From assembly GCF_000143415.4 (NCBI RefSeq), contig NW_003314275.1, positions 310,001 through 374,000 on the forward strand: DNA of 64,000 bases, in the 5' to 3' direction. The notes beneath the pieces were generated by a model, which saw only the letters and a program-made list of their open reading frames with translations, ran no database searches and was not told where the DNA came from. The DNA comes from Selaginella moellendorffii (taxonomy: Eukaryota > Plantae > Lycopodiophyta). Positions 1,396-2,790 of the stretch are shown here, piece by piece; position 1 is the stretch's first letter; every line of letters begins with the position of its first letter. Position numbers and translations under genes: made by a program.

Positions 1396-1448
1396 GAATA
1401 TCCCCTGCAAGCCGGAGGAGAATATGCTCCACAGTGCCACGAATATTC
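1396..1448. promoter_or_regulatory. Cluster of three P1BS (GNATATNC) PHR1-type binding motifs
   Basis: GAATATCC at 1396-1403, GAATATGC at 1420-1427 and GAATATTC at 1441-1448, about 550-600 bp upstream of the Nudix ATG. I saw no ATG on the + strand between the cluster and 2001. Confidence 0.75.
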
Positions 1449-2000
1449 GCCTCGAGATTCCCCCCTCGTTGGTCGGTGTTTTCCAATAAGGGAGGAAGAG
1501 ATCTCTCCTCTCCCGGTATTTAAATCCACGCGCTGGAGCGTTGGGATTTAGGTATCGCTCGCCCTTTGGTCTTCGCTACTTTCTTCTTCCCCGTGAAAGA
1601 TTTTCTTCGTTCGCTCGCTGGACTTCTTCTCCCATTTTCTCTACCCGTTTTGACAGATTGGAATCCAGAAGGCTGCAAGGCCGTGTTTTTCCGCGTCTCC
1701 GCTGCTCCATCCTCATAGACAACGTGTGAATCGCGCGGCTTCTCGCGCCCTTCCTCAAGCGCATTCGCCGCCCTTCCTCCCCAATTTCCTCCCTGCCGAG
1801 CTCGTCGCGCCACCAGACTCGGTCACGATCTAGTTGCTTGCTCGCATCCTTAAAAACCAGCGCTCCTCTTTCCTTCTCTCCACTCGCAGAGAGGAAATTT
1901 GGGCCGCGAAGAGCGCGAGCGAGGGGTCTATCACACACCGTTAGAGATCGAACGACTTCCAAACGATCGAAGTTTCTTAGATCGGTCGACGTGATTCGCC

Positions 2001-2790
2001 ATGGGTGCCGAGAATCGCTACAATGCACAAGGGCAGAGGATGGTGGCTGGATGCATTCCCTACCGGAGGGAAAAGGACAGTGACACGGTTGAGATTCTCA
2101 TGGTGAGATCGCAAAATGGTCACAACATCGTCTTCCCCAAGGCAAGTGGATCCCTCTCTCTTCTTGGCGATTTTCCTCCCCGCTAACTCGATCCAATCCC
2201 TCGCTTCTACAGGGAGGATGGGAAGTCGACGAGAGCGTACAAGACGCTGCAATTCGCGAAGCACAAGAGGAGGCTGGAGTTCATGGCCACGTCCGGGTAA
2301 GCGACGAGAAGAAGAGATCGATTGCTGGTGTCTAATTGGGATCGAATTCGTCGCGCAGGATGAGCTGGGCGTTTGGATCTTCCACAAGAGAAGCCACCAG
2401 CAATGGGAGACCAACCCAGACGGCGCTTGCGAAGTTCACATGTTCCTCCTCGAGGTGACCCAAGAGCTGGATACATGGCCGGAGCAACACCGAGGGAGAG
2501 TATGGGTAAGCGCAATCCAGATCTCTCTTCCTCTCTCTCTCTCTCTGTGGAGAAGAGAAGACGAAAACGACTCCATAGCTTTTACTTACCACCACCACTC
2601 TCTGTTCACCCAGATTGATCTCAACGAGGTCGAGAAGATAACGCTGGAGCGGTGCCACCACAATTGGATGCGCGAGGCTCTGGGAATTTTCATCCAGAAG
2701 CAGACAAGCAGCTCCCTCATCGCCGAAGCTTCACCGAACGAGCCGCGCCACACTCTCTCCTTTAACGCGAGTGTCAGGTGTAGACTTTAA
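2001..2790 (+). CDS. Nudix hydrolase, DIPP/Aps1-like subfamily (Arabidopsis NUDT12/13/16/17/18-type); 4 coding exons
   Basis: RYNAQGQRMVAGCIPYR, then FPK|GGWEVDESVQDAAIREAQEEAGV (complete Nudix box after splicing 2142-2212), then LDTWPEQHRGRVW and HNWMREAL. Exons about 2001-2141, 2213-2296, 2359-2504, 2614-2790. Confidence 0.93.

What the first reader, a model, noticed from the sequence alone, without database searches (positions are those of the whole stretch)
1396..2790. Triple P1BS cluster upstream of an inositol-pyrophosphatase-type Nudix gene: candidate phosphate-starvation feed-forward loop
Seen: three GNATATNC motifs within 53 bp (1396, 1420, 1441; starts 24 and 21 bp apart), ahead of an ATG-free leader of about 550 nt and a DIPP-type Nudix CDS. 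A motif with six fixed bases occurs about once per 4 kb by chance, so three this close is unlikely to be random. Established: PHR1-family factors bind P1BS; InsP8-loaded SPX proteins inhibit PHR; DIPP/Ddp1/Aps1-type Nudix enzymes hydrolyse inositol pyrophosphates; yeast DDP1 is PHO-regulated. Inference: PHR induces an enzyme that destroys its own inhibitory ligand, a self-reinforcing Pi-starvation switch in a lycophyte. Caveat: the palindromic sites could instead serve a divergent minus-strand transcript upstream.
Basis: partly seen in the sequence, partly recalled or inferred. Interest (0 to 1): 0.78.

Follow-up and report, generated by a model that had tools for sequence, protein, structure and literature searches.

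The report
P1BS trio before Selaginella DIPP-type Nudix
Three perfect copies of the plant phosphate-starvation promoter motif sit about 110-155 bases ahead of the transcript start of a spike-moss gene for an inositol-pyrophosphate-type Nudix hydrolase; this fits a circuit already shown in Arabidopsis, but its response to phosphate is untested here and the motif cluster is not shared by relatives.

Summary
GAATATCC (1396), GAATATGC (1420) and GAATATTC (1441) are exact, and no such trio arose in 1500 simulated windows. The leader has no ATG. The gene is Selaginella moellendorffii XP_024530914.1 (182 aa, four exons). RNA contigs from four studies confirm the three introns. In two studies the contigs begin at 1550, 33 nt after TATTTAAA, which puts the motifs at -154, -130 and -109. 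Sequence and predicted fold make the protein DIPP/Ddp1-type.

- The logic is already published for Arabidopsis: NUDT13/16/17/18/21 are induced by low phosphate, and overexpression triggers starvation responses. Marchantia NUDT1 is repressed instead.
- The second haplotype keeps all three motifs.
- No cluster lies upstream of the two Selaginella paralogs or the Marchantia, Amborella, Lotus and Arabidopsis NUDT17 homologs. Diphasiastrum has one site.
- The protein is a fast-evolving paralog outside angiosperm subclades I and II, and it lacks the conserved N-terminal LVARTGRxxQ motif.
- GNATATNC sites are generally over-represented at nearby promoters. The scan has noted such clusters at other loci of this genome (19 notes), not at this one.
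- Phosphate responsiveness could not be tested.

Verdict: a new member of a known kind, of moderate-low interest.

The parts
1396..1403 (.). P1BS site 1, GAATATCC (palindromic class GNATATNC), -154 from the apparent TSS
   Evidence: Exact match. Identical in haplotype B.
1420..1427 (.). P1BS site 2, GAATATGC, -130
   Evidence: Exact match. Identical in haplotype B, where the spacer to site 1 is 1 bp shorter.
1441..1448 (.). P1BS site 3, GAATATTC, -109; this variant is also the palindromic NIGT1/HHO site
   Evidence: Exact match. Identical in haplotype B. NIGT1 binding to GAATATTC is described in PMC11082045.
1517..1524 (+). TATA-like box TATTTAAA
   Evidence: Read from the sequence. Conserved in haplotype B. 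Lies 33 nt before the first base of the RNA contigs.
1550..2000 (+). 5'UTR, about 451 nt, unspliced, no ATG; the 5' end is approximate
   Evidence: RNA contigs of runs X5 and X8 (two studies) begin at 1550, and contiguous overlapping contigs run 1550-2139. No ATG. Also ATG-free in haplotype B despite 9-, 1-, 12- and 1-nt indels.
2001..2141 (+). CDS exon 1 (Met1 to Lys47)
   Evidence: Spliced contigs. Translation equals P0001. An in-frame TGA at 1992-1994 excludes an N-terminal extension.
2142..2212 (+). Intron 1, 71 nt, GC-AG
   Evidence: The joint 2139>2211 has 3 nt of ambiguity and is seen in all four runs. Only the +2 register gives a known splice-site pair.
2213..2296 (+). CDS exon 2, carrying the Nudix box GGWEVDESVQDAAIREAQEEAGV
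2297..2358 (+). Intron 2, 62 nt, GT-AG
   Evidence: Joint seen in four runs.
2359..2505 (+). CDS exon 3
2506..2613 (+). Intron 3, 108 nt, GT-AG, open in the exon frame
   Evidence: Joint seen in four runs. ORF 2116-2790 reads through it.
2614..2790 (+). CDS exon 4 with stop codon TAA
2791..3004 (+). 3'UTR; the end is approximate and overlaps the 3' end of the convergent minus-strand ubiquitin-domain gene
   Evidence: Contigs of X5 and X11 end at 2996 and 3004. Contigs of X1 and X8 run on and carry a minus-strand intron (CT..AC) at 2926-2976.

Best explanation
The three GNATATNC sites form a proximal promoter module for dimeric MYB-coiled-coil (PHR-family) factors. They sit roughly two helical turns apart, 110-155 bp upstream of the TATA-directed start of a Selaginella moellendorffii DIPP-type Nudix gene.

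Under phosphate sufficiency, InsP8-loaded SPX proteins would keep PHR off these sites. When phosphate and InsP8 fall, PHR binds and raises transcription. The cytosolic Nudix enzyme then removes beta-phosphates from inositol pyrophosphates. That lowers the SPX ligand further and reinforces the starvation state, which is a positive feedback.

Shown here:
- the motif cluster and its statistics;
- its position relative to the transcript;
- its retention in the second allele;
- the gene model and its expression;
- DIPP-type sequence and fold;
- purifying selection on the protein.

Taken from established knowledge: PHR-P1BS-SPX-InsP8 signalling, and the low-Pi induction and PP-InsP phosphatase activity of Arabidopsis NUDT homologs.

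Inferred only: PHR binding at these sites, induction by low phosphate in Selaginella, and the enzyme's substrate.
For: - Cluster statistics: 0 of 1500 simulations gave a trio, and the window total is 21 against 10 expected.
- Position: TATTTAAA at 1517, with RNA contigs of two independent studies starting at 1550.
- The nearest other gene start is 1.9 kb away on the other side.
- Haplotype B keeps all 24 motif bases, although five to six differences, including an indel, fall in the spacers and flanks.
- The segment is unique, not a transposon or repeat.
- Protein: Pfam NUDIX 5.8e-16. The best PDB sequence hits are all DIPP1/2/3 and Ddp1. The AlphaFold model has pLDDT 82.8, and its top 24 Foldseek hits are DIPP/Ddp1 structures with TM up to 0.83.
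- All 36 columns invariant across 41 plant homologs are kept, including FPKGGWE and the Nudix box.
- Allele comparison gives 5 synonymous and 1 non-synonymous difference.
- Literature: AtNUDT17/18/21 hydrolyse PP-InsPs, are up-regulated under Pi starvation, and activate starvation genes when overexpressed (PMC11611267). NUDT13/16 are also induced (PMC12678693; PMC13573052). PHR1- and NIGT1-type proteins occur in S. moellendorffii (PMC11082045).
Against: - There are no expression data under low phosphate and no binding data. The gene is already expressed in all four sampled RNA studies.
- The cluster is absent upstream of the two Selaginella paralogs and of the Marchantia, Amborella, Lotus and Arabidopsis NUDT17 homologs. 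Diphasiastrum has a single site.
- Marchantia NUDT1 is repressed, not induced, by Pi starvation.
- Allelic retention of the motifs is not statistically significant (P about 0.07-0.2).
- GNATATNC sites also mark the next two promoter regions, ubiquitin-domain/TAR-like and Fip1/thaumatin. They are spread by at least one repeat family. So the motif may be used more broadly in this genome.
- The protein sits on a very long branch (about 2 changes per column).
- It lacks the near-invariant N-terminal LVARTGRxxQ motif and has His where 94% of relatives have Arg (position 139). Its substrate preference is therefore uncertain.
Confidence: 0.4

Rival explanations
1. The sites are functional but not phosphate-specific. 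In S. moellendorffii, GNATATNC clusters would be a common promoter element read by other GARP or MYB-CC proteins: NIGT1/HHO repressors, which bind GAATATTC, or non-PHR MYB-CC paralogs. The cluster would then tune this gene to nitrogen status, to development, or constitutively.
For: - Every promoter-type intergenic region in the first 13 kb of the window carries GAATATNC sites: 1396-1441, 5182/5208 and 12099. The genes they serve are unrelated: Nudix, ubiquitin-domain, TAR/alliinase-like, Fip1 and thaumatin.
- Pooled S. moellendorffii DNA held here has 0.39 sites per kb against about 0.16 expected.
- Site 3 is the exact NIGT1 palindrome.
- In Marchantia, P1BS is about as frequent in down-regulated as in up-regulated genes.
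- The gene is expressed in standard RNA samples.
- Unchecked scan notes report P1BS clusters at many unrelated promoters of this genome.
Against: - Sites 1 and 2 (GAATATCC, GAATATGC) fit the degenerate PHR consensus, not the NIGT1 palindrome.
- Only two GAATC/GATTC half-sites lie nearby.
- Part of the local excess comes from duplicated elements, not promoters.
- Multi-copy proximal P1BS is the classic architecture of strongly Pi-induced genes (own knowledge).
Confidence: 0.3
2. PHR does induce the gene, but the enzyme's relevant substrate is not InsP8 or InsP7. Candidates are polyphosphate, diadenosine polyphosphates, PRPP or capped RNA. The module would then serve phosphate recycling and not close a signalling loop.
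For: - The DIPP family is promiscuous, acting on polyP, Ap5-6A, mRNA cap and PRPP (PMC13573052).
- The protein is the most divergent sampled, matching 57 of 73 family-conserved residues against 61-71 of 71-73 for eight comparison homologs.
- It lacks the N-terminal basic motif and has R139H and a 4-residue insertion.
Against: - Positions aligned to DIPP substrate contacts are largely kept: R13, S37, K47, G49, R86, H88 and the R in HRGRVW (alignment; the residue list is from PMC13573052, and the mapping from own knowledge).
- All characterised plant members tested hydrolyse PP-InsPs.
Confidence: 0.15
3. The cluster is a neutral, non-functional coincidence, or it serves the distant divergent aldolase gene and not the Nudix gene.
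For: - The cluster is not conserved in any sampled homolog promoter.
- Allelic retention is not significant.
- The sites are palindromic and so orientation-free.
Against: - 0 of 1500 simulations gave such a trio.
- The sites lie 110-155 bp from the Nudix TSS but 1930 bp or more from the aldolase CDS start.
- No transcript contigs lie on the upstream side.
- The local spacers diverge between haplotypes while the motifs do not.
Confidence: 0.1

Closest known systems
Arabidopsis NUDT17/18/21 (subclade I) and NUDT12/13/16 (subclade II) PP-InsP pyrophosphatases
   Same: They belong to the same DIPP-type Nudix family (42-50% identity to plant members). They are small stand-alone enzymes. Several Arabidopsis genes are induced by Pi starvation, and their overexpression activates starvation responses, which is the feedback logic proposed here.
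   Different: The Selaginella protein lies outside both angiosperm subclades, on a long branch. It keeps the long P(E/D)GxC loop of the bryophyte/subclade II type, so the RefSeq label 'NUDT17, mitochondrial' is only an automatic name. It lacks the LVARTGRxxQ N-terminus. The Arabidopsis NUDT17 locus has no canonical P1BS in 4 kb upstream, whereas this gene has three within 53 bp.
Marchantia polymorpha MpNUDT1
   Same: It is a DIPP-type homolog from a non-seed plant (P0033, 42% identity), linked to phosphate and nitrate homeostasis.
   Different: MpNUDT1 is repressed under Pi starvation, and its locus has no P1BS within 2 kb upstream of the CDS.
Yeast Ddp1 and human DIPP1/2/3 (NUDT3/4/10/11)
   Same: They share the same fold and are the top structural and sequence matches. 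The Nudix box and most substrate-contact positions are shared.
   Different: Sequence identity is only 24-31%. Transcriptional control is different (PHO pathway in yeast). There is no P1BS/PHR system outside the green lineage.
Canonical multi-P1BS starvation promoters (for example SPX1, IPS1, and the SlSPX2 reporter)
   Same: They also carry two or more GNATATNC sites close together in the proximal promoter, read by PHR dimers (architecture from own knowledge).
   Different: Those promoters have demonstrated PHR binding and strong induction. Here neither has been tested.

Membership tests
DIPP-type Nudix hydrolases (Ddp1/Aps1/DIPP, plant NUDT4/12/13/16/17/18/21) | Nudix box Gx5Ex7REUxEExGU with the catalytic glutamates | tested here: met
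   GGWEVDESVQDAAIREAQEEAGV at residues 48-70. Pfam NUDIX 59 bits against a cut-off of 21.
DIPP-type Nudix hydrolases (Ddp1/Aps1/DIPP, plant NUDT4/12/13/16/17/18/21) | Closest solved relatives by sequence and by fold are DIPP/Ddp1, not other Nudix subfamilies | tested here: met
   The 19 best PDB sequence hits are DIPP1/2/3 and Ddp1 (one chain is deposited only as MS0616). The top 24 Foldseek hits are of the same kind, with TM 0.67-0.83 by target length. Model pLDDT is 82.8.
DIPP-type Nudix hydrolases (Ddp1/Aps1/DIPP, plant NUDT4/12/13/16/17/18/21) | Conserved phosphate-contact residues (Ddp1 R32, S52/S53, K63, G65, R102, R129, R152; PMC13573052) | tested here: inconclusive
   Basic or identical residues are kept at the positions aligned to DIPP K18, S40, G52, R89, H91 and R115 (alignment). 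The position aligned to DIPP K133 and to the plant-conserved Arg is His. The plant-conserved N-terminal RxGRxxQ is missing. The mapping of Ddp1 numbering to DIPP rests on my own knowledge.
DIPP-type Nudix hydrolases (Ddp1/Aps1/DIPP, plant NUDT4/12/13/16/17/18/21) | Hydrolysis of the beta-phosphate of PP-InsPs | not testable with these tools
   This needs a recombinant enzyme assay or in planta PP-InsP profiling.
Angiosperm subclade I (NUDT4/17/18/21), as implied by the RefSeq name | Groups inside the subclade I clade and shares its 7-residue loop deletion | tested here: not met
   Subclade I is a 100/100 clade that excludes P0001. P0001 keeps the long loop.
PHR/P1BS-controlled phosphate-starvation-induced genes | GNATATNC sites in the proximal promoter, beyond chance | tested here: met
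   Three exact sites lie at -154, -130 and -109, and 0 of 1500 simulations gave such a trio.
PHR/P1BS-controlled phosphate-starvation-induced genes | Transcript induced by phosphate starvation in a PHR-dependent way | not testable with these tools
   Only assembled contigs of unlabelled runs were available. No Selaginella low-Pi study was found.
PHR/P1BS-controlled phosphate-starvation-induced genes | Sites conserved in orthologous or paralogous promoters | tested here: not met
   The sites are kept in the allele only. They are absent from the two Selaginella paralogs and from the Marchantia, Amborella, Lotus and Arabidopsis NUDT17 loci. Diphasiastrum has one site. True orthologs from other Selaginella species were not available.

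The most novel reading that the evidence does not exclude
A lineage-specific, fast-evolving DIPP paralog was recruited into the PHR regulon independently in lycophytes. The liverwort homolog is repressed by starvation, and angiosperm subclade I is a separate later clade whose sampled promoters lack the motif. On this reading, positive feedback on the InsP8 signal evolved more than once in land plants. It also implies that the altered N-terminus and pocket of the Selaginella paralog may reflect specialisation for a particular PP-InsP isomer.
Probability: 0.2. Interest if true: 0.5.

Novelty: new member of a known kind. Interest (0 to 1): 0.3.

Why it matters
If the gene proves to be induced by low phosphate, it would show that PP-InsP phosphatases are wired into the starvation regulon in a lycophyte. 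That would help date when this self-reinforcing step entered the PHR-SPX-InsP8 circuit: it is absent or reversed in Marchantia and present in Arabidopsis. The compact 53-bp trio would also be a handy native test piece for Selaginella PHR binding. The concept itself is already in the Arabidopsis literature, and the gene is already annotated.

Tried and rejected
- Tandem duplication or repeat origin of the trio: rejected. There are no direct repeats in 1200-1700, and blastn finds only the segment itself and its allele.
- Known RNA element in the long leader: no Rfam hit in 1-6000.
- N-terminal extension of the protein that would restore the missing family motif: excluded. An in-frame TGA lies at 1992-1994 and the leader has no ATG.
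- Divergent upstream transcript: no contigs lie in 900-1296. Only one low-depth contig, 1297-1478, appears in one run.
- Allelic constraint test: the motifs are untouched, but P is only 0.07-0.2, so it is not counted as evidence of selection.
- Orthology to angiosperm subclades: unresolved. The protein sits on a long branch, and its pairing with paralog P0004 in the first tree was flagged as possible long-branch attraction.
- Locus look-ups for P0004, P0018 and P0007 found nothing. Cluster members replaced the first two. Physcomitrium was not sampled.
- A positional analysis of all 21 window sites against ORFs and TATA boxes gave no clean result.
- Literature searches found no paper linking NUDT promoters to P1BS and no Selaginella phosphate-starvation transcriptome.
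- The exhaustive protein search and the complex prediction were not used, because no claim here rests on them.

Full report
**Observation**

- The window holds 21 GNATATNC matches against 10.0 +/- 3.2 in dinucleotide-preserving shuffles.
- A trio within 53 bp never arose in 1500 first-order Markov simulations. A pair arose in 94.
- No additional sites with one mismatch or fewer flank the trio.
- The segment is not a tandem or dispersed repeat.
- Positions 1449-2000 are free of ATG.

**Gene model and transcript**

The ORF read-through of intron 3 served as a query and retrieved P0001, 'nudix hydrolase 17, mitochondrial [Selaginella moellendorffii]', 182 aa. The exons are 2001-2141, 2213-2296, 2359-2505 and 2614-2790, and they translate to P0001 exactly.

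Assembled contigs of four runs from four studies skip exactly these three introns, so the runs are RNA and the gene is expressed. Intron 1 can only be GC-AG.

Contigs of two independent studies begin at 1550, which is 33 nt after TATTTAAA (1517-1524). Contigs cannot prove a start. Even so, this places the motifs at about -154, -130 and -109 and gives an unspliced, ATG-free 5'UTR of about 451 nt.

The 3' end lies near 3000. It overlaps the 3' end of a convergent minus-strand gene whose own intron (2926-2976) is visible in two runs.

**Which gene do the sites serve?**

The locus lies on GL377579.1. The next gene upstream is a fructose-bisphosphate aldolase on the minus strand, with its CDS start 1930 bp from the cluster. 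No RNA contig lies in 900-1296. The Nudix gene is therefore the obvious client.

**The protein**

- Pfam finds only NUDIX.
- The best solved relatives by sequence are all DIPP1/2/3 and yeast Ddp1.
- An AlphaFold model (pLDDT 82.8) has DIPP/Ddp1 structures as its top 24 Foldseek hits.
- All 36 columns invariant across 41 plant homologs are kept, including FPKGGWE and the Nudix box.

It is nevertheless the most divergent member sampled.
- It matches 57 of 73 family-conserved residues, against 61-71 for eight comparison homologs.
- Its terminal branch is about 2 changes per column.
- The near-invariant N-terminal LVARTGRxxQ is missing. This cannot be an annotation error, because an in-frame stop precedes the ATG.
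- It has a 4-residue insertion, and His where 94% of relatives have Arg (position 139).

In the tree, angiosperm subclade I (NUDT17/18-like) is a 100/100 clade that excludes this protein. Lycophyte and bryophyte sequences form an unresolved base. The protein also keeps the long loop that subclade I has lost, so the 'NUDT17' name is only automatic.

The two haplotype alleles differ by five synonymous changes and one conservative change, V130I. The protein is therefore under purifying selection.

**Is the cluster conserved?**

The second haplotype (GL377602.1, L006) keeps all three sites, the TATA box and the ATG-free leader. Meanwhile the spacers and flanks carry an indel and four to five substitutions, and the leader carries 9-, 12- and two 1-nt indels. 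The chance that the differences miss the 24 motif bases is 0.07-0.2, which is suggestive only.

Outside the allele there is no conservation:
- no site within 2 kb upstream of the CDS in Selaginella paralog 73964, on both haplotypes;
- one site at -1.7 kb in the NUDT16-like paralog;
- none in Marchantia MpNUDT1, Amborella NUDT16 or the Lotus NUDT17-like gene;
- one site (-145) in Diphasiastrum;
- none in 4 kb upstream of Arabidopsis NUDT17, although that gene is Pi-starvation induced according to the literature.

These genes are homologs, not proven orthologs. Other Selaginella species could not be reached.

**How specific is the motif in this genome?**

In the 20.8-kb annotated locus there are 14 sites. 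Apart from the trio they comprise:
- a GAATATCC pair (window 5182/5208) in the shared promoter of a ubiquitin-domain gene and a TAR/alliinase-like gene, kept in haplotype B;
- a single site between Fip1 and thaumatin (window 12099);
- one site 29 bp before a small PPR-like CDS;
- an AT-rich palindromic cluster inside the isocyanide-synthase-like gene.

Two window sites (49506, 55886) lie in a 147-bp repeat with the core TAGGAATATTCTAGG. Two GCATATGC sites (31515, 37154) lie in another duplication.

Unchecked notes of this scan report P1BS clusters at many other promoters of this genome, some at PHR-like genes and some at unrelated housekeeping genes.

The motif is thus generally over-represented and promoter-associated here. 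That fits either a large PHR regulon or a broader use by other GARP or MYB-CC factors. NIGT1-type repressors bind GAATATTC, the third site, and both families exist in S. moellendorffii (PMC11082045). In Marchantia, P1BS is about as common in down-regulated as in up-regulated genes.

**What is already known**

- Laurent et al. 2024 (PMC11611267) show that AtNUDT17 is a PP-InsP phosphatase.
- The same paper shows by reporters that NUDT17/18/21 are up-regulated under Pi starvation, with elevated NUDT17 transcript in RNA-seq.
- It also shows that AtNUDT17 overexpression lowers InsP8-dependent repression and induces starvation genes, and that MpNUDT1 is repressed under starvation.
- Schneider et al. 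2025 (PMC12678693) and a 2026 review (PMC13573052) add subclade-specific isomer preferences and the induction of NUDT13/16.

Strictly, it is a positive feedback and not a feed-forward loop. I found no paper that links these promoters to P1BS and no Selaginella low-phosphate transcriptome.

**Verdict**

The anatomy is real and coherent. A unique, allele-conserved trio of perfect P1BS sites sits in the proximal promoter of an expressed, selectively maintained DIPP-type Nudix gene.

The most likely reading is that PHR-type factors bind the sites and that the gene belongs to the starvation regulon. I put the full loop at about 0.4, and a functional MYB-CC/GARP binding module of some kind at about 0.75.

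The main rival, at about 0.3, is that GNATATNC clusters in this genome are not phosphate-specific.

The finding is a new member of a known kind. Its one mildly novel angle is possible independent recruitment of a divergent lycophyte paralog.

**Limits**
- Only assembled contigs, not reads, were available, so the TSS is approximate and expression levels cannot be compared.
- No phosphate-treatment data were available.
- Three locus look-ups failed.
- The spliced protein was reached through its database record and was not typed in.

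Noticed in passing
window 5182-5189 and 5208-5215: Two identical GAATATCC sites lie 26 bp apart in the short shared promoter of a minus-strand ubiquitin-domain gene and a plus-strand TAR/alliinase-like aminotransferase gene (ATG at 5520). Both sites are kept in the second haplotype (L006 7179/7205).
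   Followed up: partly
window 12099-12106: A single GAATATTC lies in the bidirectional promoter between Fip1 (minus strand) and a thaumatin-family gene (plus strand). All three promoter-type intergenic regions in the first 13 kb therefore carry GAATATNC sites.
   Followed up: partly
L001 2794-2832 (about 5.2 kb before the window start): Four GNATATNC matches at 10-11 bp spacing lie in an AT-rich, partly palindromic stretch inside the annotated range of the DIT1/PvcA-like (isocyanide synthase) gene. Three more lie within 650 bp. This looks compositional or repeat-like and not promoter-like.
   Followed up: partly
window 49460-49606 and 55850-55986: A 147-bp repeat (90% identical) has the core TAGGAATATTCTAGGAAGTGTTTA. 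It carries a perfect P1BS and shows that repeats spread such sites in this genome. The second copy lies near a microbial-type terpene synthase ORF (53775-54587).
   Followed up: partly
window 31485-31550 and 37124-37190: Another duplicated segment carries the palindrome GCATATGC. That 8-mer occurs five times in the window (14344, 31515, 33878, 37154, 61306).
   Followed up: no
window 2142-2212: Intron 1 of the Nudix gene uses a GC-AG splice pair. RNA contigs of four studies confirm it.
   Followed up: yes
window 2926-2976, minus strand: A 51-nt minus-strand intron (CT..AC on the plus strand) lies in the 3' region of the convergent ubiquitin-domain gene. The two genes' 3' ends overlap, and contigs of two runs join across both genes.
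   Followed up: partly
L012 1-4000 (Arabidopsis NUDT17 locus, upstream): There is no canonical GNATATNC in 4 kb upstream of the AtNUDT17 start codon, although the gene is reported as Pi-starvation induced. Its induction may use degenerate sites, distant or downstream sites (one lies at +2171), or be indirect.
   Followed up: partly
window 1297-1478: One low-depth contig (word depth 8) from one run covers the P1BS region upstream of the main transcript start. It could be genomic DNA carry-over or a rare upstream start.
   Followed up: no
window 13909-15984, 23574-24791, 46374-49367: Large single-exon ORFs encode a PPR protein, an NPH3-family protein and an LRR receptor kinase. These are ordinary neighbours.
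   Followed up: partly
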